A stretch of DNA of 61,891 bases. It comes from Aplysia californica. Its lineage: Eukaryota. This document shows, one piece after another, positions 4,601 to 46,800 of the stretch. Below the pieces are notes generated by a model, which made no database searches, was not told where the DNA came from, and worked only from the letters and a program-made list of their open reading frames with translations. The stretch covers positions 67,508 through 129,398 of the forward strand of contig NW_004797723.1 in assembly GCF_000002075.1 (NCBI RefSeq), written 5' to 3'. The first letter of the stretch is position 1; every line of letters begins with the position of its first letter. Both the position numbers and the translations under genes were made by a program.

Positions 4601-7600
4601 TTTTGCTTTTTTGATAGTTTATAGTTTTCTTACTATGTGCAGATGTCAAAAGCCTGATGGACCTATGATCACAAGACAGTACACACCAATCTCTCCCGTT
4701 GACACAAAAGGATTTTTTGAGCTAGCCATCAAGGTGAGAAATAAAACTGACTTTAATCAGGCTTGGTACTTCGGAGAAAATATAATATGGACTGTGCTTT
4801 GTGGACTTTGTGGCTTATACTATAGGAGTCTTTGTAAATTTTTGTATGTTTTGTGTGGTACAATTGTTCAAAAATTCTTGAAAAAGTTGTATGAGGACAA
4901 ATTCTCATTTCAAAATTGACAGAACTTTCAACTGCATCTCATGAAAACTCTTTGTGGGCTTGTGTATCAAATAAAATGTTTATGCCCCTAGCAACCATAT
5001 CTGTTATCTATGGCAAAAACTATTGAACAAATCGTTTCATTGACTGTCATTGTATGAGGGAATTTGGCTAAAAATAACTGTTTTTGTGAGAATAGTTTCC
5101 TTCAAATGCCACTACTGTAATGCTTTTTCTCCAAGATTTGATTCCAGCCAATATGCAGTTACGTCACTCTGCCTTTTGAGAGCAAAACAGTTCCCACCTG
5201 TGTCACACCAAGGCCAAAGGTCAATCAAAGTGTATCAAGGCCGAAGGTCAATCAAAGTGTGTTAAAAAAGAATTTTGTCATTTTTACAGATTTACACAGA
5301 AGGTCAAATGTCTCAGCTTGTGAAAAACTGGAAGGTTGGGGAAAGGCTGGAGGCAAGAGGACCTATTGGACACTTGTCATATTCTCGGAACAAAGTAAGC
5401 TATGTTTTCTTTTCCATACTGAGTAGGCTACTTCTTTACTTTCTTGCTGTTTTTGTCCTCAAATACCTTGAGGTGTCAAGGGGAGATGCAATTGTTGGAC
5501 ATGGGCCAGGTGTGTTGCTGTTTGGATGGTCATGTTGTCCGTTTTCGTACAGAGTAAAGAAAGTTTTCAGGCTTATGGAAGAAACATCCTGATTTTGGAG
5601 AGAAAAAAATGGTTTCATAATAATCATAGACCATAATCACAGAATGAAGAGAGTTTGAATTTTGATAGTTGAGGGCACTTTCCAAATCTACCATCTCAAA
5701 CCTCTCAGTGTTTTGGATAGTATTCTTATTTAAACTATTTGTACTGACTAGAGTTTCTTCACTTTTGTGTAGTGGTTGTTTAAAATTTTTTCAGGTTGGC
5801 AGTGAGAACAGGCCAGCATTTTTAATTAGATTTTTCAACTGTGAATGTGTCATGTTAATACTCGCAGCTTGTACATTGTCCCTTTGAAATTTTATTAAAC
5901 TCTTGTCACTCAGAGAGAATTTTCCTTGACAGTGGGTGTTTGGCGGGGGCTGTGCTGTGATTTGCTTGCTCCTTCTTTCCTATCAAACGTCTATCGTTTT
6001 TACCTCTCTCTTTTTTGTGTTTGTTACTCTCTTGATACACTTCTACTAATCTTCTGCACTTATATGACCGAAGTGTGTTGCAAGTGTTGTAAACTCAGAC
6101 AAACAAAAACAAAACTTCCTTGCCTTTGTGTTGGGGATGTGGAAACACCTAAGTGAAGTTACCCTACATTGCTGGCTTACTATGCGCACATAAACCAGTA
6201 ATCAGTCTTGGAGACAAGCAGCCTACAGCATCATCATGTATCCTTTCAGTATAACCTGTTTAGGTGATGTCTGCTCCTTCTATTATTTTTAGTGTTACCA
6301 GTGTATTTTTTTGCTTTGTGGCAAAATGTGGTTATCTGGCAGACTTTCAATAGATAGTCTTTTAGTATATTTGTAATGAAGGTGTTGAAGGGGGACCACC
6401 TGTATTTGGTCAGCCCTACTTCTTTATTCTCCTTCTGTAATTTCTGCCTTGCTCATTCCCAGCTCTGAATGGTCGTTTACTCATGTGCTTCTCCGTCCTC
6501 AAAAAACTCCAACTCAGTGTTTGTACTAGTGGTGGGCGGTACCGGCGAAATCCAGTGTCGGTACTTTCTCGATTAAACTTTGCAAGCAGAATTTTAAAAA
6601 TAGTTACGGCCGCTAAAAAATGATTTCATTTTCAGAATCAGCGTATCAAAATAAGCAAAGTGGCTCACGTGGAACCTGATTTGAAGCCATATTATAAATT
6701 TAAGCAAACTTCGTTTTTGATTGTCAATTTTGAATCTGAAGTCCTGTATAAAGGTCACTCGCTGCGTTGTGTGCATCTGACATCACAGCTGCTAGGCCCA
6801 GGCCTACACACTGCACACTTCCCGTGGCCCGTTAAGAAAAAATCCCCTCTCGTAGGCTCCTTCTCAGAGCCAGTATTAACCGTTGGTGTCGGCTCCTTCC
6901 CGGAGCCGGTACTGGAGGCCAGATGTCGGTACTGACACCTCCTTCGGTAGAACCGGGAGTTCCGGTACTGGGTACCGGTACCTGCCCATCCCTAGTTTGT
7001 ACGACTCAACTGATCTCCTCTTTCACCATAAGATTGTTAGAAAAAAAAACACGTCCTTATTACCATGCTCTATTTCTTTATCCTCAGTTTAGTCGGATCC
7101 TCATGCTGTGTGCCGGAACAGGAGTAGCCCCCATGTGTCAGGTGATCAGCTCTGTGCTCTCGGACGAATTGGAAGACACCTACCTCAGACTGGTATACGC
7201 ATGCCGCTCGTATAAACAACTCCTTGCGAAGATGGAAATTGACGAGTGGCGAAGGTTCTGGAATTTCTCTACCATCTTTGTATTGAGTCAGGTTGGTAAC
7301 GCTAAATATTTTTGCAAGCCCCCATTGACACCATTTTTGATCACCTAGGAGGCAGGCTTTCGACATTGTCTGTCATGGCCAACTCGGGCTGAGAGGAATA
7401 CAATATCCAAACAGAAAGACCAAAATGCTCATCAACAAATTTATTCTCTCTCAGGAATCGAACTCGTGTGTCCTGCGTATGAAAAGGAAGTGCTGAACCA
7501 TCACACCTGATGCCAGTTCGTCCTTACCTTGTGTTTCGATTTTGTTTGTGATGGGGATGGGGTAGTGGATGAATCATGGTTCTCCAGCTCTTTTTGCTTC

Positions 7601-31228: not shown

Positions 31229-33010
31229 AAGTAGTCGTTTCCACCTAAGATCCCACCGCTTACGAAACAAAAATGACTGTCACGTCGCCGGCTATGGAAG
31301 ACTTGCCCAGCCGGTGAAGCCGGAGGGTGGCCCACGGACGAGTTCAAGTAGTCGGAAATTTCGGCAGGAGCCGGAAAACTTTCACCCCTGGATCCCAGTT
31401 CGCTTACGTTCCCAGCTCGCTTAAGATCCCGCTGTTTTAAGAAAACTTAATTTTTACTATACAAAAGTCACCCCTAAGATCCCGCTCTGATTCACTCTAA
31501 ACTCTAAGATCCCGCATTTCACATCACAATTTGCGGAACAAAAACGCGTGTGGGCACAGCCAATCAACCAAGAGTGAAAGGTTGAGATCAATAAACTGTC
31601 CGTCACGTCAAAGATCAGCCACTATCGCGAATGCGATCACATACACATTGTAAAACTAGATGAAGCGATATAATGTTTGCCCCAGACGGGATCACACTGG
31701 GATGTGAACTGACCGACACTTTTGTTTTCCCCGTGCATCACACTCACACCTGAGCTCTCCCCCTAAACTTACATCACTCGCTGGGTGGGTAGGGCCTACA
31801 CGTTCGCCCCAGGCCGGATCACATCGAATCGTGAACTCTTCAGTTGTCTCTACTCCCGAATTAGCGAGACAGACTGAATTTTCATTGGTGTGTTCACAAT
31901 GTAATGGTGTGTAACGGCAAAGGTGGTTGNNNNNNNNNNNNNNNNNNNNNNNNNNNNNNNNNNNNNNNNNNNNNNNNNNNNNNNNNNNNNNNNNNNNNNN
32001 NNNNNNNNNNNNNNNNNNNNNNNNNNNNNGAGAGAGAGAGAGAGAGAAAGAGAGTCTACGAATAATATAATAATGTTACCCCCCCTTCTTAATGTGGATT
32101 GAATGAGATTATAACAGTGGGGCGGTCGCCTGTGGTTTTACCGTTGTGAGACTTTCAGAATGTCCAGTGGCCCGAGTAATAGAAACCACACACGTATCAC
32201 AAAGGGAGCTGTACTTTCGCAGATTCTGAAGAGAAAAGCGGATATTTTCACGTTTGACCTACCAACATATCTTTGAAAAGAGTTGAAAAGCCAGTGCGTT
32301 GTACCACAAGGAAAGGGGAAATGCTCAGATTGATTGAAAGTAAATGAAAGGGGTCGTGTCCTGTTTAGCATGTTTACAAGAGGTCAAATCATTTACGGTT
32401 TTTGGGAACGGGGAGAAGAAGGAGACAGAAGATTAATGTGGCTTTCTTTCTGAGGAGTCTGTGTCACTTTCCTTCGCTTGTTGACATCTGATTCAAGACG
32501 CCTGCGATTGTGTGGAGTGTAGTGGCACTTGACGCTGATAGAATACCGCACTCGTATAATGTTATGATGAAGGACGATCTGTAACAACGTTCTGACTGTA
32601 AACAGCGTGTATGTAGGTCATGGGTTCTTGGTTGTTTGGGGGGGGGAGATCTCGGTCAGAGATGGAAAGCTATACATTTTCGACAGGTAAAGGGGAGGAG
32701 CAACTGGATAAGCGTTGATCTTGAGACTCATGGATAGGATCATAAGTGAAAATGGCACGCCTCATGCCACAATGCACTGTGATAGGTCATCAAGGTTAAC
32801 CACTCCTTGCTGGCCATATGCCATAAACCCACCAAGGGGTCACATCAGTTCATTTTAGTTTTTGAGTGGAGGGAGACCATTTTACCGATTGTGAGCCTTA
32901 ACATGGGTCACCATAGATTCTTCCCTGGGTTCGTCGGTTAAGATCCCGGTTCGCCCAAGATCCTGCATTTCCTTGTTCCTGAGCACCGGGATCTTAGGCG
33001 GAGACTACTG
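31229..33010. mobile_element. About 1.8 kb non-autonomous Tc1/mariner-like TIR element
   Basis: Ends AGTAGTCGTTTCCACCTAAGATCCC / GGGATCTTAGGCGGAGACTACTG with repeated TAAGATCCC subterminal motifs; no transposase ORF. Confidence 0.7.
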
Positions 33011-34093
33011 CACAACAAAGATTATTAAGTCACTTCAGAAACCATCAAATCAACTTGCAAAAGCCTAAAACGAGAACAAGTCAGATCAAACTCCGAGATC
33101 CAGTTTAACTGTTATATTTGATTTTGCAAGATCATGCCACAGACAAATCTATGTCAAATGTACCGGGAAGCAAAAATAATTTATTCCAAAAAAACTTTTG
33201 GGGAAATGTTTCTCTTACTCTTACAACAGTAGAACAAATCTGCACCTCCAGCGCGTTTGGTTCAAAGACATGTTCAGCTTTAACTTAAACAGTCACCACA
33301 ATGTTACCTCATGTCAAAGTATCGAGGTACTTGTCAGAAAAAAACTATATCAGTCAACTATCCGATTCGTTTACCAAATCATCACACAGAAACCTACTCA
33401 AAAGGAAATCCTGGAACAGTTGCACTTGCTTTTGCCTACATTGTAAAAGTTTCTAAGGCAATTCTGACATAATCTTAAACAGGTAGTACATGCCTCCAAA
33501 ATAACCATTATTGTGTTGAAATAGGGGCATAAATAAGACTCAATTCAGGTTGAATACAGAAAGCATTGGTATGGGTGCCGCTACTCACAAAGTGAACTTG
33601 GCTGCCACTGAATTGATCAAAACAACAACCATGAACAAAATTAAAAAAGAAGGAGAAATTGTAGTTGTGAACAATTTATTATTAAAAGCAACAACAGAAT
33701 CCTCAATCAAGAGGACTTCGTCACAAGAAGTCACATTCAAAGTTAAAAAAAATAAAATCAAGCACCAAATTAGGACGTGTCAGGTTTACAACTTTACTTT
33801 TAATAAACAAAATAAAACATGCAAGTACCTCCCTCACTCTTGGGTGCCTCCCACTTAAAATATATCTGTCTGCAAGAAATGATGATGAAAACCTGTGAGT
33901 CCGATTTCTTAAAAGTAAAAGGGTACCATGCTAAAAAAAAACATGTTTTCAATAAATCTAAAAGAGAGGTAGGCCTACTACTATTTGTCCAGGGAGAAAT
34001 TTTCCTTTAGATGAGCAGTAAACCCTGAATTCACACAACCTAATTTGGCACTTTACAATGAAACACATTCACTCCCTTCCTAATTGACACACC

Positions 34094-34610
34094 ATCTGCT
34101 TCTCGTGAACATACATAGAAAATGTATTTACAACAATTGATTTTTTCCCCCAGTTTTGTGCCATTAAAATGGTAACAAAATGACACTGAATGTTTCAACA
34201 GAAAAAATTTTGGTGACTGTATCTGTTCTTACAGCCAAACCAAAAAAATCGCTTCTTTTCCGTGGACCAAAAGTGTAGTATCGGGCCCTAAACCAGAACA
34301 TGACTAAAGACCAAATGTGCAGTACCCTCATTCTTGTGTGTAGTATCCGAGCTTATGAAAAGCATTATTCAAAATGCTAGGCAAAATTTATGCCTTACAG
34401 TGTAGCATCTGAACCTTCGAATGAAGTACCTGAACTTATCAGCACAAATAAACAAACTGATACATGGCCTCAATAGCAAAGTTGAGAGGTCTCGCATTAG
34501 AGCCGATTACTGCAGTCCCACACTGAAAAACAAAATAAGATTGTCTGTGACTTAAGTGTAAAATCAGAACGACAGTGCGTCGCTTATGTCTACAGTCTTG
34601 AATACTTACC
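34094..34610 (-). promoter_or_regulatory. Putative SNRPA1 3'-UTR element: U1 snRNA-complementary site plus array of U2 snRNA-complementary sites
   Basis: The + strand matches U2 snRNA, so the mRNA is antisense to it. Matches: GTATCTGTTCTTA 34219-34231, ATCGCTTCT 34248-34256, AAGTGTAGTATC 34271-34282, GTGTAGTATC 34338-34347, AGTGTAGcATCTG 34399-34411, AGTAcCTGaaCTTATCAG 34425-34442, GCTTCTCG 34098-34105. ATACTTACC (U1 nt 1-9) is at 34602-34610. The function is inferred. Confidence 0.7.
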
Positions 34611-34841
34611 AAGTCAAAGTCAGACTGTTCGATAAATTGTATAAAATGAAACCATGAAGATATTGCATTAATCTTAACCATGAACTTAAAAGCCATCAGA
34701 TTCAGTGAGAGCACTATTAATTGAAATGGGAAAACCAAAATCACTTTAAAAAACAATCATTTGTTCTCAAGACACGAATGAAATTTTTTACGTTTCATTT
34801 CTAAGAGATGACACTTTTTTTTTTACTCATTACAAAAATTA

Positions 34842-37800
34842 CTAGTCCTCTTCCATATCATCATTGTCATCATTGTCATCATCATCATCATTATCTTCTT
34901 CCTGATAACCAGATGCCTGATTGCCTTCATCTTCATCTTCGTCCCCTCCTTCTGGCTCCATTTCTTCTTCCTCTTCGGCCTGATTTCCTTCTTCTTCTTC
35001 TTCTTCTTCCTCCTCCTCCTCTTCTTCCTCTGCACTCTCTTTTGGCTCTGAAAAGACAAACAGCAAAGAGAAAACAATACATAAAACATGTTTCTCCTTT
35101 GAAGAAAAGTGGAATTGACACATCTCCCTATCACAACCGCTTGCAAAGACAAATTCTGCAGCGCACAATACACAGAGGAAGACATTAATGGTCATTTAGT
35201 GCAGGAAAAGAGTAAGACAAGACAGCAGACAGACAGAAACAAAAGATGGAACAAAACAAATAGGAATGCAGGAAGGGAGAAGCAAAGACAAGCAAAGAAG
35301 AGGTGGGAGGACAACATACCAGAGGGGGCAGGCCTGTATTTCAAATATATGGCCTTAAACTCCTTTTCATTTAAAAGTTAACATAACAAGACCTTTAAAA
35401 TCTGGAATGTCAGACAAACGTAATCATATAAAATATTTCAAACGCTGTGACTTTAAAAAAAACCCAAAACCAAGAGAATATCTGCTTTGAGTTGAGCTTA
35501 ATCAAGCCAGCACAATGAAAAAACCATTCTTGTTATGCTCTTACTAACGCTCTGCCAATTTGCATACATACTAAATCCTCAGTGATAGACAAAGTTAGGC
35601 AGAAANNNNNNNNNNNNNNNNNNNNNNNNNNNNNNNNNNNNNNNNNNNNNNNNNNNNNNNNNNNNNNNNNNNNNNNNNNNNNNNNNNNNNNNNNNNNNNN
35701 NNNNNACAACAACAACAACAAACAAACCTTGCCATGGGTGAAAAATACTACTTTCATAAGAGACGAATACAGTTCATTGTGTGTCATACAGTCATGTACT
35801 TACTTGACCCTCAGAGTCCTTGCAGATACCATAAGATCACCTACCGGTAATCCCAAGTCTTACAGAAGAGAATTGTGTTGCTTATGTTGCTCCCCGCATG
35901 AGAAACACCTCGTTTCAAATGCATTGAGAGTGGGCTCAAAATAAGCAGAAGTTTAGTGACACAAAACTCACCCACAGATACACAAACACACGCACATACA
36001 ACCAAACAAATAGAACTGGTTGGGTGATCACAGCACAAATATATTTCAGTATTTGGTTTTTCTCTTTGTTAACAATCCGTATGAAGATAAAAACAAAACA
36101 AAGCTGCCATTCCAGAGGGCAGTGAAGGAAGTTGTTTTCTCATAAAAGCCTAATGTGACTCAAGAGATAATGAGATTATTTCTCCTTTCGATAGTCTTAT
36201 CACAGGTGCACAGAATAAGTTTTATATTTTGCTTTGTACTTGTATACGCTCTTCCTTTTGTTTGTTCACTTTTAAGAAATGAAAAGTTGTGTAAATAGTA
36301 GCTCTATCATTGCCAGGGTCCAATGCCACAAAAGTACACATTCCAATTCAAATGAAACCTAGTGGGTAGGCCAACAATCATTATTCATGTTTGTATTAGG
36401 AAATAATTTGATCACAGAGGAGTCAACTACCATTACATAAAACAGAATTGCACGAGAAAAAGAAAGACAATCCATGAAAATGCTGGATAAAATTGAATCC
36501 AATGAAAAAGCGTCTGAAGTAAGTCACAAATATTAGACAATTGATTTTTAGGACCTGTCTTTTGAAGGACAAGAACTGCACACAACACTAAATACTGACA
36601 GACACAATTGATTTTGCTAATTTAGTAGTTCCCTGGCAAGTAGACTAATGCATACAAAACTAATCTTAATTCTTATTTCACTCTTAGAATTATTCATGTT
36701 GCCAACACAGAAATGCGGTTAACCTTTATAATGAAAATAAATGTAATAATAACACATTACCTGAACATAGTAAAGACAATGTGAAAGACGTACATCATCA
36801 ATTTTTTTAAAGTCGTGTACTGTATGCCAGAGTGTCCAATATTTGAAACACATGAACATATATGTGAATCTCATCTACAATTTCATACCATACCCAAAAA
36901 TCAATATACCACAAGTAAAGCAAACATCTAATAATAATTAAATAATAATAATAATAATAAAATAAAATAAAATGATACATTTTTCTCCTCAACCTACATA
37001 TATGCCAGTAAAACTTATAAGACCATTCAGTTTTGTTAAAAAGCATCATCAATGATACACTTAGTATGTATTCCTCACCTTTTGCCCCCGTTGATTTACT
37101 TGGAGCATCACCCTGCCCTGGAATCTGTCCTGACTGCAGCATTTGATGAATTTTCTCATACTCCTCCAAAGATTTTGCACCCAAAATAGCTTTCTGTAAC
37201 AACAACATTGCAAAAACGGTTTAGAAAAAGCATTTATTTTTCCATTCTCGAACAAAAGGCACAAATAAACACTTTCACAGAAGAACACCACAGTCTTTAC
37301 CACCTACGCAATTCTACTACGGAAAAACAAAGTATTCATTTCCTTGTACAGCGAAAACAAGATGAACAAAATTTTTGAAAATTGAGAATTTCAGCAAGAG
37401 CAGAAGAGCCCATATCTCTCAGTCGGCTCTCAAAATTGAATTTGTCCCCACACACTCCAGTGCGCGAAGAGGAAGCTCATCCATGCTTAATATATTCTGT
37501 TCACCTTTGGTCATACTGGAAACTGACTACTTTTGCGAAAATATGATTAAGAAAAATACCTTTTTAAAATTTTAAAAACAAAAAAGATGGTGCAGACGTT
37601 AGCTGTCTAAGATCCTTTTAAAAGTCTTTTTCTCATTCTTACATTTATGTCACAACCAGAACCAGACTTGTTCATCAACAATGGCTATATATTTATATAC
37701 ACATATGAGAATTACCCTGATTGCAGCTGCTTCCTGCTTCGTTGGACCAGTGGTTGCAACTCGTTGTGTCTGTAGATTTTCTCCTGGAGTGAAAGTTTTG

Positions 37801-43800: not shown

Positions 43801-46800
43801 GTCCTCGTCAACTAGAGGTGATATGAAACTATTTTTATAAGTGTACTTCAACACCCTCGCTTTCCAACGGGTCCCATATGTACGTTCAGCGTAACGTGAG
43901 CCATGATCTCCAAGTCCCGTATTTCTGCCACTGAAGTATGTGTTCGTGTCAGTCTGCTTAAGTGTTTGTGTTCATGTGTGGCCTACTTCTAGAACCGTCT
44001 GTGTTGGTTCAAAACCGAAGTGTACTTCTCGTTTAAAACACATCAAGTTGGTAGCTCTAGATGTACTTCCAATGAAATTTGAACAAGTTGACCCATATAA
44101 ACATAAGGAATTCAAAAGGATAACCACGTAACAGCTTGATTTTTAACAAAATGACATTACCTGATAAAAAATAATCTGATAGTTTTGAAAACTATTGTAC
44201 AAGTAAAAGGAAAAAAAGAGAGCAAAACATTCGGAAATTGATGTTCCTTTCAAACCCCAGATCGTTGGTTACAACAATAGCATCTAAAAAAAGCTTTTAA
44301 ATTCGAATGGACATAATCACTCATAATGACTTTAATCGAGAGGTTATTCATGTATTGGCAAAACTTATAATTATAGAAAGTATAGGAAACTGTTGGAGAT
44401 AGTCATAATAACAGAGACGACGGCCTAGCCACGTGGCTTTCCAAGTTTCCAAGGATCACCCCCGACCGTAAATTCATGGACAACATCAGAATCATAGATC
44501 TCTACATTCAGAAAAACATTTCTTTTGTGATTCCTTGAAAAAGTACGTCATAAGTTCTTAGAGGGCAGCTGATTAGGCTTACTTGGCTAATCTTTCATTA
44601 TATAGAGGCCTGTCTAGTGTTTTACGGTACTTACGCGTGTCGCGCATCAGGCCTAGGTCTAACTAAACATTAAATGCAGTCACCCAAATACCAGTCAGAA
44701 ACCTCTCAAAGATACATTTCCAGTGACCAATAAAAAAACCCGTCAGATGACAAAAGTGTGCCTTTGAGCTGAGCATGCTTTTGTACAGCGTGCGTTTAGG
44801 CGAAGACTAATGTATATATCTGGCAACTTGGTAACACATGTGTCACTTTTACGACAGCTACAGAGTTGAAAGTTGGCAAGTATTTGCAAAAAGATAGGTA
44901 GATCCCCACTACGGAGCCCGATTTTTTAATTTATTCATTTCCTGAATTTAGAAAAATATATTGGACAGAAAGTTCCCATCTTTCTTTGGCCTTTGTGATT
45001 ATTCCACTGAGAAACGAAACAAATGTGCTTAGCTGTCCTTCACAGCATAAGTGCCAGAAGTGATATTCCGCTGGAAGTAGTGTCTCTCCGCCTAGGCTTT
45101 ACAACACAAAAAAAAAACACCTTCTTATACCACCTACCCCCCTTTTTCAAAAGAAAACAAAAACCCTTTTGAATAAGCCCTATTTTTCTCCTTGACAATG
45201 GCAATGCGAGGCCGTTTTACACAGGTTTGACTGTGTATACAATTGCGTACGTATAGCAAAATTTTCAAAATTTGAATTTCTGTGTACGCAATTGCGTGCG
45301 TAAGAGACTCAGCCACATGGAGCTTACGAGAGCACACTACACTGGCTTCTGATTGGCTAAAATATCAATGAAACGACATCACGAGGACGATAGCCTACAT
45401 TGGCTTCTGATTGTGATTGGCTAAAATGGACTACTAGGCCGCGAGTCATTTAGACTACATGTATCTATTTTAAAATGACTTGATTAACAAGGCACTAGAA
45501 CAATATATGTATGTCCTATAGTTGACACAGGGGGTAGAAACTAGTGAACTGCTGCAGTTTTTATCTGTACCGATCTTTGCCTGGCCTCTGCTCTAAAATA
45601 GAGATCACCAGAAGACACTCGCTCGCTCAATGGTGACCTAGATTTCCGACTACATTCCACTAGGCCTAAGGTCAAAGTAATATTTCACCAAATTTGGTAT
45701 GTGTACATACGTCACTATATACATTATACAGCCAATCAGAAGCCGGTGTAGTGTGCTCTCGTTAGATCCATGTGGCACAGCCAGGCTTTACAGTTAGACA
45801 CTGCCTCTGTGATTTTGAAGACGTCGGTGTGTTCCTTTTACAGTGTAGAAGCCTTTTCATGGGTTATTATTTTCTTATAGTGCTTTTTTGTGATGGTGCA
45901 AGGCGAAACCCAGATCTAGATCGTCTGTTTATGCGTTGTACTTGTTCCAGATCAAATGTAGGGGATAATCCGGTTTTGGCCCAAGCGATTACTATGGAGT
46001 ATTGGTTTTGGCTCCACCGAGCGTCTAAACGATTACTTTTCGAGTCTTTGCGCGGCGAGCGAGAGGGATGGCGCACAGCGAGAGAGAGAGGGGGAACACC
46101 GCGCTGTGTTGGGTGCTGGGTGCGTAGGGTCGACGATATGATAATTTACGTAATATAATATACTCCGGTTTTGGCCCCAGTTAGTAATGCCGAAGAAACA
46201 ATAATAACAAAGGCGAAGAGAGAACTTGGCCAAAACCGGAGTATAGTATATATGGGCCGCTCTTTACAATTCTCTGGGCCTAACCCCAATAAGTAATAAT
46301 TTTTAAAGCCCTTACTCGCTGCCAGACGACATGAGCAGCGACCACAACTTCCAATAGAGGTAAGTTTGTTAGATTTTTATGTATCAGCGAGCGAAGGTCT
46401 TTTTTACTTTTACATAAAATAATCTAGAAAACAATTATTATCAGGGGGCAAGCCCCCTGAAACCCCCTCAATTCTGACATTCTTAAATCATTATTTCGGG
46501 TACAGCCCCAATTCAATTGCTATTGTTTGTATTAGGCTATTAGTTCGTTGTTCATGCTTGCCCCCTTGCTCCTCTACTCTGGGTTTAGCCCCAATTCAAA
46601 TTCAATTGCCATCAGTTCATGATGTTTCACACTCAGCTGTTAGTAGATCTTTCTAGGCCCCACTGAAACTGAAAAATAGCAGACAGCGCCGCATTCGCCT
46701 CTCTCTTCCACTTCCAGTTCCCCAGTCCGGGTTTGGTCCCACTACTAAGCCCACTTGTGGACAGCGCAGCGTCGCATTCGTAAGATCTATCGATCGCCTT

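What the first reader, a model, noticed from the sequence alone, without database searches (positions are those of the whole stretch)
33608..34610. Perfect U1 site upstream of the anti-U2 array: possible NMD-coupled 3'-UTR intron or U1-dependent polyadenylation control
Seen: the mRNA reads UUG|GUAAGUAU (+ strand ATACTTACC at 34602-34610, equal to U1 nt1-9), about 230 nt after the stop and directly 5' of the U2 array. Candidate acceptors lie downstream at about 33959 (CCTCTCTTTTAG) and about 33609 (long U-rich tract ending TTCAG). Minus-strand AATAAA signals are at 33675-33680 and 33180-33185. Established: an exon junction more than 50-55 nt downstream of a stop triggers NMD, and U1 bound in a terminal exon inhibits polyadenylation. 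Inference: this provides the effector arm. U2 occupancy would switch splicing of a 3'-UTR intron or poly(A) choice and so set U2A' levels.
Basis: partly seen in the sequence, partly recalled or inferred. Interest (0 to 1): 0.8.

Follow-up and report, generated by a model that had tools for sequence, protein, structure and literature searches.

The report
U1-binding site in U2A' 3' UTR
The mRNA for the spliceosome protein U2A' keeps a perfect nine-base docking site for U1 snRNA in its 3' untranslated region, beside several sites that match U2 snRNA. It may help tune the gene's output, but no splicing or regulation at this site could be shown here.

Summary
GGTAAGTAT lies at 34610-34602 on the minus strand and pairs with nt 1-9 of this genome's own U1 snRNA. 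It sits 231 nt after the stop codon of a confirmed U2A' (SNRPA1) gene and about 200 nt upstream of several sites complementary to U2.

One such 9-mer per 62-kb window is ordinary (0.45 expected). On the sense strand of this 1.18-kb 3' UTR it is rare: 84 of 20,000 simulations contained it. It is also the best U1 match in the 14-kb gene.

RNA data place the poly(A) site at about 33661, using the AATAAA at 33680-33675. An RNA-like contig runs unspliced from 34860 to 33661, so the main mRNA retains the U1 site. No junction from 34609 was found.

My best reading (0.4) is an unspliced U1 landing site that works together with the U2-complementary sites. Chance (0.37) and a rare NMD intron (0.15) remain open. 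Cross-species conservation could not be tested. Earlier scan notes cover only this same window, not other DNA.

The parts
34602..34610 (-). GGUAAGUAU, a 9-nt perfect complement of U1 snRNA nt 1-9 (positions -1 to +8 of a 5' splice site)
   Evidence: Duplex energy is -11.0 kcal/mol, against -3.0 to -10.0 for the seven mapped donors of the gene. It is the best U1 match on the sense strand between 47600 and 33661.
34842..35046 (-). Terminal coding exon of U2A' (acidic tail), with stop codon TAG at 34844-34842
   Evidence: The acceptor is ...gtcttttcag|AGCC.
33661..34841 (-). 3' UTR of the main mRNA (1,181 nt), unspliced
   Evidence: An X3 contig of 1,374 nt lies collinear on 33661-34860; its gaps are only small indels with a net +15 letters. 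No joints were listed inside this span.
33675..33680 (-). AAUAAA poly(A) signal in use; cleavage occurs at about 33661-33660
   Evidence: In X21, 14 reads carry non-templated A tails starting at 33661. 3'-tag depth peaks at 33710-33823, and RNA depth is zero at 33026-33595.
34523..34609 (-). Candidate 87-nt mini-intron (prediction only): GUAAGUAU ... CUGAU branch-like motif 41 nt from the 3' end ... ucuuauuuuguuuuucag
   Evidence: It is not seen spliced.
34219..34519 (-). Block of U2 snRNA-complementary segments. + strand matches to U2: nt 37-49 (34219-31), 1-9 (34248-56), 29-41 (34270-82), 32-41 (34338-47), 32-41 with one mismatch (34400-09), 46-54 (34435-43), 163-171 (34511-19)
   Evidence: There are six exact matches of 9 nt or more antisense to the mRNA and none in the same sense. 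Simulated mean is 0.55, and 0 of 1,000 simulations reached six.
33958..33973 (-).
   Evidence: No joint was found.
33608..33630 (-).
33180..33185 (-). Second AAUAAA, with no evidence of use
   Evidence: RNA depth is zero at 33026-33595 in X21, X22 and X3.

Best explanation
GGUAAGUAU at 34610-34602 is a maximal-strength docking site for the 5' end of U1 snRNA. It lies in the terminal exon (3' UTR) of the U2A' gene and stays in the predominant polyadenylated mRNA.

It sits at the 5' edge of a single-copy block with very few polymorphisms. That block also carries a non-random set of complements to U2 snRNA: the branch-point-recognition region several times, the 5' end, and the stem-loop IV loop.

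I read the whole as a pseudo-intron: a 5' splice site followed by U2-binding sites that lack a bulged branch adenosine. U1 and U2 snRNPs would assemble on it without productive splicing. This would lower U2A' output through nuclear retention and decay of mRNAs with an intact 5' splice-site motif, through weakened terminal-exon definition and 3'-end formation, or through both.

Shown here: the sequence, its strength, its retention in the mRNA, the poly(A) site, and the U2 complementarity. Inferred: U1 and U2 binding in vivo, any effect on expression, and any feedback from U2A' or U2 levels.
For: - Exact 9-nt complement of the genome's own U1 nt 1-9.
- It has the most matches to the U1 5'-end consensus, and the longest contiguous run, of any GT site on the sense strand of the 14-kb gene. 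It is stronger than all seven mapped donors. One non-GT window (45140) ties it in duplex energy.
- Only 0.4% of simulated UTRs of this composition contain it.
- It is retained in the RNA: an X3 contig is collinear over 33661-34860 and ends at the poly(A) site defined by tailed reads.
- The neighbouring U2 complementarity is highly non-random and strand-specific. It is unique in the 927-Mb genome.
- U1 antisense matches of 9 nt or more number 2 against 0.35 expected, P=0.034.
- A second individual (X1) shows 1 difference in 737 nt of proximal UTR, against 25 in 984 nt and 8 in 365 nt in the flanks.
- Published precedent: a consensus 5' splice-site motif in a 3' terminal exon causes nuclear retention and decay (PMC4380460, PMC9074902). 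U1 can inhibit cleavage and polyadenylation over more than 1000 nt, and a U1 site cooperates with snRNA-complementary elements in the U11/U12-65K 3' UTR (PMC5473595).
Against: - There is no functional or binding data.
- Conservation in other species could not be examined.
- The significance tests for the 9-mer were chosen after the site was noticed. Genome-wide, about 1% of UTRs of this size would carry such a site by chance.
- The polymorphism contrast rests on one other haplotype. It falls to P about 0.10 if the block has a single genealogy, and it does not single out the U1 site.
- The site is about 950 nt from the poly(A) signal, whereas the classical U1-70K/poly(A) polymerase cases act within about 100 nt.
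- The mRNA is clearly made, polyadenylated and detected, so any repression is partial.
- No special local RNA structure presents the site (z = 0.45).
Confidence: 0.4

Rival explanations
1. Chance. In a U/A-rich 1.18-kb UTR a 9-mer matching the U1 5' end arose without selection and has no regulatory role. The cell tolerates it or ignores it.
For: - One match per window is what shuffles give (0.45 expected; 37 of 100 shuffles had at least one).
- With thousands of UTRs per genome, about 0.4-1% should hold such a 9-mer.
- No junction reads were found and the mRNA is abundant enough to assemble.
- There is no significant local structure.
Against: - It is the strongest U1 complement in the whole gene.
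- It lies in the low-polymorphism block.
- It sits upstream of a clearly non-random set of U2 complements, in intron-like order.
Confidence: 0.37
2. It is a real 5' splice site of a minor 3'-UTR intron. The acceptor could be 34523 (87 nt) or a farther one (34186, 33958, 33870). The junction would lie more than 55 nt past the stop codon, so the spliced mRNA would be degraded by NMD and rarely seen.
For: - The donor is maximal.
- Good pyrimidine-tract acceptors follow. 34523 has ucuuauuuuguuuuucag and a CUGAU motif 41 nt upstream. 33958 and 33870 also rank high.
- The geometry satisfies the 50-55-nt rule (231 nt after the stop).
- NMD substrates are expected to be scarce at steady state, and the raw reads have about zero depth at the site.
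Against: - No joint at 34609 was found in any run.
- The X3 RNA-like contig crosses all candidate introns unspliced, with no assembly break.
- No retrocopy preserving a spliced form exists in the genome.
Confidence: 0.15
3. It is a relic. The + strand of this UTR derives from captured snRNA gene sequence (U2-like pieces followed by the start of a U1 gene, the same order and strand as in the genome's U2-U1 tandem units). The 9-mer would be what is left of a U1 copy.
For: - On the + strand the order is U2-like segments (34219-34519) and then U1 nt 1-9 (34602-34610). U2 is followed by U1 on the same strand in the 3.08-kb tandem units on G000:C516.
- Truncated tandem U2 5' copies occur next to U2 genes in other eukaryotic contigs.
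Against: - There is no similarity to U1 beyond nt 9. Local alignments are no better than shuffles.
- Rfam lists no U1 match even at E up to 10.
- There is no similarity to the U2-U1 spacer.
- The U2 pieces are scrambled and repeated, not one collinear copy.
- The stretch is single-copy.
Confidence: 0.05

Closest known systems
U11/U12-65K (RNPC3) 3' UTR circuit: USSE plus a conserved U1 site (Verbeeren et al. 2017, PMC5473595)
   Same: The mRNA encodes a protein specific to one snRNP. Its 3' UTR carries repeated complements to that snRNP's own snRNA, plus a U1-type 5' splice site in the shared 3' UTR. In 65K, U1 binding there suppresses cleavage and polyadenylation, and snRNP binding to the UTR causes nuclear retention.
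   Different: - Here the snRNA is U2 (major spliceosome), not U11.
- The complements target the branch-point-recognition region, the 5' end and the stem-loop IV loop, and are not 5' splice-site mimics.
- The U1 site is a perfect consensus about 950 nt upstream of the poly(A) signal and upstream of the snRNA sites. In 65K it is suboptimal and about 100 nt from the signal.
- No isoform switch, conservation or function has been shown here.
Consensus 5' splice-site motif in 3' terminal exons (Lee et al. 2015, PMC4380460; Lee et al. 2022, PMC9074902)
   Same: An intact consensus 5' splice-site motif is retained in the terminal exon of a polyadenylated mRNA. In the published cases this leads to U1-70K/ZFC3H1-dependent nuclear retention and decay.
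   Different: Those cases were defined with reporters and misprocessed transcripts in human cells. Here the motif is natural, sits in a spliceosomal protein gene of another animal, is flanked by U2-binding sites, and is untested.
U1A autoregulation through the polyadenylation-inhibitory element
   Same: A snRNP protein gene limits its own expression through an element in its 3' UTR that imitates part of the snRNP's RNA and interferes with polyadenylation.
   Different: The U1A element is a protein-binding mimic of a U1 hairpin loop placed next to the poly(A) signal. Here the element is complementary to snRNA and lies far from the signal.
NMD-coupled 3'-UTR introns and poison exons of splicing-factor genes (from my own knowledge)
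   Same: There is a strong donor more than 55 nt after the stop codon with usable acceptors downstream.
   Different: No spliced isoform was detected here, and the dominant mRNA keeps the sequence.

Membership tests
Terminal-exon U1 site (5' splice-site motif causing retention or poly(A) inhibition) | Sequence complementary to the 5' end of U1 snRNA at consensus strength | tested here: met
   Nine contiguous pairs with the genome's own U1 nt 1-9, at -11.0 kcal/mol.
Terminal-exon U1 site (5' splice-site motif causing retention or poly(A) inhibition) | Lies in the last exon and is retained in the polyadenylated RNA | tested here: met
   A contig is collinear over 33661-34860, and poly(A)-tailed reads start at 33661. 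Caveat: X3 is called RNA from its coverage pattern, not from its record.
Terminal-exon U1 site (5' splice-site motif causing retention or poly(A) inhibition) | U1 snRNP / U1-70K-dependent loss of export, stability or polyadenylation | not testable with these tools
   This needs reporters, U1 blocking or cell fractionation.
NMD-coupled 3'-UTR intron | Exon junction more than 50-55 nt downstream of the stop codon | tested here: met
   The donor is 231 nt after the TAG. This is geometry only.
NMD-coupled 3'-UTR intron | A spliced isoform exists | tested here: inconclusive
   No joint at 34609 in four runs. However, raw-read depth is about 0 at the site and contigs hide rare forms.
NMD-coupled 3'-UTR intron | The isoform rises when NMD is blocked | not testable with these tools
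   No such data set could be reached.
USSE-type snRNP feedback element (U11-48K, U11/U12-65K) | Repeated snRNA-complementary sites in the mRNA of a protein of the same snRNP | tested here: met
   Six exact complements of 9 nt or more to U2, none in the same sense; 0 of 1,000 simulations reached six. The gene is U2A'.
USSE-type snRNP feedback element (U11-48K, U11/U12-65K) | The sites are tandem U12-type 5' splice sites bound by U11 | tested here: not met
   The sites complement U2 (nt 1-9, 29-49, 163-171), not U11. This is an analogue, not a member.
USSE-type snRNP feedback element (U11-48K, U11/U12-65K) | Deep evolutionary conservation | not testable with these tools
   No orthologous 3' UTR could be fetched.
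U1 pseudogene or snRNA-derived insertion | Similarity to U1 beyond the first nine bases | tested here: not met
   No U1 match in Rfam at E up to 10. Local alignment is no better than shuffles.

The most novel reading that the evidence does not exclude
The proximal 3' UTR of U2A' may be a sensor of U2 snRNP assembly built as a pseudo-intron.

- A consensus U1 site opens an 87-nt mini-intron.
- The sequence four bases past the candidate acceptor, GGGACUGCAGUAAUC at 34519-34505, pairs with the U2 stem-loop IV loop. That loop is the surface that U2A'/U2B'' cover in the mature particle.
- Further downstream lie perfect branch-site complements without a bulged adenosine.

U2 snRNA that lacks U2A' could then pair with the UTR and change whether the U1 site is spliced (leading to NMD), left unspliced (retention), or neutralised. 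This would set U2A' synthesis according to the amount of unassembled U2. It would be a major-spliceosome counterpart of the U11 USSE loop.
Probability: 0.1. Interest if true: 0.85.

Novelty: new member of a known kind. Interest (0 to 1): 0.5.

Why it matters
How cells balance the protein and RNA parts of the major spliceosome is poorly understood. Clear feedback circuits are known for U1A and for the minor-spliceosome proteins 48K and 65K.

A natural, retained consensus U1 site next to a set of U2 complements, in the mRNA of a U2-specific protein, would offer a directly testable candidate for such a circuit in U2 snRNP. [quoted passage not shown]

If the 9-mer is only chance, the finding is ordinary. 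The interest then lies with the U2 complements alone.

Tried and rejected
A full-library protein search with exon 4 gave only a 758-bp ocean-metagenome contig as a near relative. Pseudo-ORFs across the UTR and the terminal-exon ORF found nothing. An alignment of single exons to a distant U2A' came out misaligned and was dropped.
- I did not build a joined coding sequence. Exons were searched one by one, by reference.
- A metagenome scan for two GATACTACAC sites 45-70 nt apart returned over 120 loci. None was an orthologue. The few carrying other U2 pieces are antisense views of U2 genes with tandem truncated 5' copies.
- The UTR has no retrocopies or second copies that could record a spliced form.
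- Rfam found nothing at gathering thresholds. There is only a 14.9-bit U2 trace on the + strand and no U1 match.
- Extended U1 or U2 pseudogene alignment was not better than shuffles with gapped scoring. Exact-match statistics were used instead.
- No structure presents the site; z = 0.45.
- No paper on U2A'/SNRPA1 autoregulation through its UTR turned up among the papers listed.
- The two raw-read runs turned out to be 3'-tag libraries and are uninformative at the site.
- The run of N near 35600-35720 was left alone.

Full report
**The gene and the site**

The minus strand of the window carries a U2A' (SNRPA1) gene.
- Exon-sized matches to U2A' proteins lie at 47502-47419, 42685-42638, 41256-41149, 40642-40520, 39556-39449, about 37802-37713 and 37208-about 37100.
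- The last exon is 35046-34842. It encodes an acidic tail and ends in TAG at 34844-34842.
- Exon 3 alone matches the U2A' chains of spliceosome structures at E about 1e-12.
They were searched separately, by reference.

GGTAAGTAT sits at 34610-34602 on the minus strand, so the mRNA reads UUG|GUAAGUAU. The genome's own U1 genes start with ATACTTACC. The pairing is therefore nine contiguous base pairs, positions -1 to +8 of a 5' splice site. The site lies 231 nt past the stop codon.

**Is it more than chance?**

- At the scale of the window it is not. There is one match against 0.45 expected, and 37 of 100 shuffles had at least one.
- On the sense strand of the 1,181-nt UTR the expectation is about 0.01. 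Only 84 of 20,000 first-order simulations contained it.
- It has the most matches to the U1 5'-end consensus, and the longest contiguous run, of any GT site on the sense strand between 47600 and 33661.
- Its duplex energy with U1 is -11.0 kcal/mol. The gene's seven mapped donors range from -3.0 to -10.0. One non-GT window at 45140 ties it in energy.
- These tests were chosen after the site was noticed, so they make chance less likely without excluding it.

**What the RNA data show**

The two raw-read runs are 3'-tag poly(A) libraries.
- Their reads pile up at 33710-33823 on the gene's strand.
- In X21, 14 reads carry non-templated A tails beginning at 33661. That is 14-16 nt after the AAUAAA at 33680-33675.
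- RNA depth is zero from 33026 to 33595 in X21, X22 and X3.

An X3 contig of 1,374 nt lies collinear on 33661-34860.
- I take X3 to be RNA because its coverage stops at the poly(A) site and is absent from the downstream intergenic DNA.
- The contig differs from the window only by small indels with a net +15 letters. It therefore crosses the U1 site and every candidate intron unspliced.
- No joint at 34609 was listed in any run.

There are limits to this evidence. Raw-read depth at 34508-34621 is zero, contigs hide rare isoforms, and only one call to lay reads was allowed. The firm statement is that the predominant mRNA retains the U1 site. A rare spliced form is not excluded.

**Splice potential**

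It would give an 87-nt intron with a CUGAU branch-like motif 41 nt from its 3' end.
- A U-rich UTR offers many such sites, so this shows only that splicing is possible.

**Context: the U2 complements**

I compared the UTR with the genome's own U2 (sequence). The strand antisense to the mRNA carries exact U2 segments:
- nt 37-49 at 34219-31
- nt 1-9 at 34248-56
- nt 29-41 at 34270-82
- nt 32-41 at 34338-47
- nt 46-54 at 34435-43
- nt 163-171 at 34511-19
- nt 32-41 with one mismatch at 34400-09

That makes six exact matches of 9 nt or more antisense to the mRNA and none in the same sense. The simulated mean is 0.55, and 0 of 1,000 simulations reached six. U6, U5 and U4 show nothing comparable. 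U1 has two antisense matches, P=0.034.

The block is single-copy in the 927-Mb genome, and its two-part U2 motif occurs nowhere else. The segments are repeated and not collinear with U2. They fall mainly on the U2 5' end, the branch-point-recognition region and the stem-loop IV loop. This fits selection for pairing better than a single decayed pseudogene does, but it does not prove it.

The U1 site lies about 200 nt upstream of the first U2 site. That is the order found in an intron.

**Constraint within the species**

- A second individual (X1, DNA) differs from the window at 25 places in 33140-34123 and at 8 places in the intron stretch 35036-35400.
- It differs at only one place in 34124-34860, the stretch that holds the U1 site and the U2 block.
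- Against the flanking rate, P is 3e-7 if sites are independent, but about 0.10 if the block has a single genealogy.
- This is suggestive and not specific to the 9-mer.

**Origin**

- There is no similarity to U1 beyond nt 9 and none to the spacer of the genome's U2-U1 tandem units.
- On the + strand the order, U2-like pieces then the U1 start, does mimic those units.
- I give a relic origin 0.05.

**Mechanism**

Published work supplies the most likely route.
- A consensus 5' splice-site motif kept in a 3' terminal exon causes nuclear retention and decay through U1-70K and ZFC3H1 (PMC4380460, PMC9074902).
- U1 bound in a last exon can suppress cleavage and polyadenylation, even over more than 1000 nt (PMC5473595, Discussion).
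- In the U11/U12-65K gene a U1 site works together with snRNA-complementary elements in the 3' UTR to control 3'-end formation and nuclear retention (PMC5473595).

By analogy, I propose that the U2A' UTR is a pseudo-intron. U1 would dock at 34610-34602 and U2 at the downstream perfect complements, which lack a bulged branch adenosine. This would give non-productive complexes that dampen U2A' mRNA output. All steps after "the site is present and retained" are inference.

I weight the explanations as follows:
- Unspliced U1 landing site: 0.40
- Chance: 0.37
- Minor NMD-coupled intron: 0.15
- Relic: 0.05

**Comparison and novelty**

The feature works like a terminal-exon U1 site and resembles the 65K circuit. 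It is not a member of the USSE family, because its snRNA sites complement U2 and are not U11-type splice sites. No paper describing U2A' autoregulation through its 3' UTR was found among the papers listed. If it is functional, it is a new member of the class of regulatory U1 sites in 3' UTRs. Together with the U2 sites it would be a new variant of snRNP feedback.

**What could not be done**

- Orthologous UTRs could not be reached.
- Deep or NMD-inhibited RNA-seq could not be examined.
- The run of N near 35600-35720 was not touched.
- The earlier scan notes found concern this same window only.

Noticed in passing
window 34257-34266 (+): TTTCCGTGGA equals nt 52-61 of the genome's own U5 snRNA (a 10-mer). 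It fills most of the spacer between the U2 nt 1-9 and U2 nt 29-41 matches. The mRNA there reads as anti-U2, then anti-U5, then anti-U2. About 0.1 such matches would be expected anywhere in the UTR.
   Followed up: partly
window 34505-34519 (-) and 34318-34329 (-): The mRNA sequence GGGACUGCAGUAAUC pairs with the loop of U2 stem-loop IV (own U2 nt 158-174) at -22 kcal/mol. It starts four bases after the candidate acceptor at 34523. A weaker second site (GAGGGUACUGCA) lies inside the U2 block. That loop is where U2B''/U2A' bind.
   Followed up: partly
window 35047-35400 (-): RNA reads lie upstream of the last acceptor (35078-35191, carrying allele 35120 A>G). An X3 contig also runs from the terminal exon into the intron at about 0.4 times the UTR depth. 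The last intron therefore seems partly retained in poly(A)+ RNA.
   Followed up: no
window 34815-34824 (-): Reads carry extra A runs starting at the genomic A10 tract 27 nt after the stop codon. This is either internal oligo-dT priming or a minor proximal poly(A) site.
   Followed up: no
window 32570-33025: This is a very high-copy repeat, with contig depth 1e4-1e5 against about 40 for single-copy DNA. It has RNA reads on the + strand, just downstream of the U2A' gene.
   Followed up: no
G000:C516:518000-552000 (L004, L005): U1 and U2 snRNA genes alternate on the same strand in tandem units of about 3.08 kb.
   Followed up: no
window 33843-33852 (-) and 34232-34241 (-): The mRNA contains two same-sense 10-mers of U1, nt 16-25 and nt 75-84. 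This is more than the 0.35 expected for matches of 9 nt or more. Their meaning is unknown.
   Followed up: no
L065:7050-7175, L131 (minus strand view 5340-5418): Metagenome contigs from other eukaryotes show U2 genes with tandem truncated copies of the U2 5' part. Partial U2 5' duplications therefore do arise as DNA.
   Followed up: partly
window 34636-34684 (-): A direct repeat of UUCAUGGUU-containing 23-mers lies between the stop codon and the U1 site (family D4). It is unexplained.
   Followed up: no
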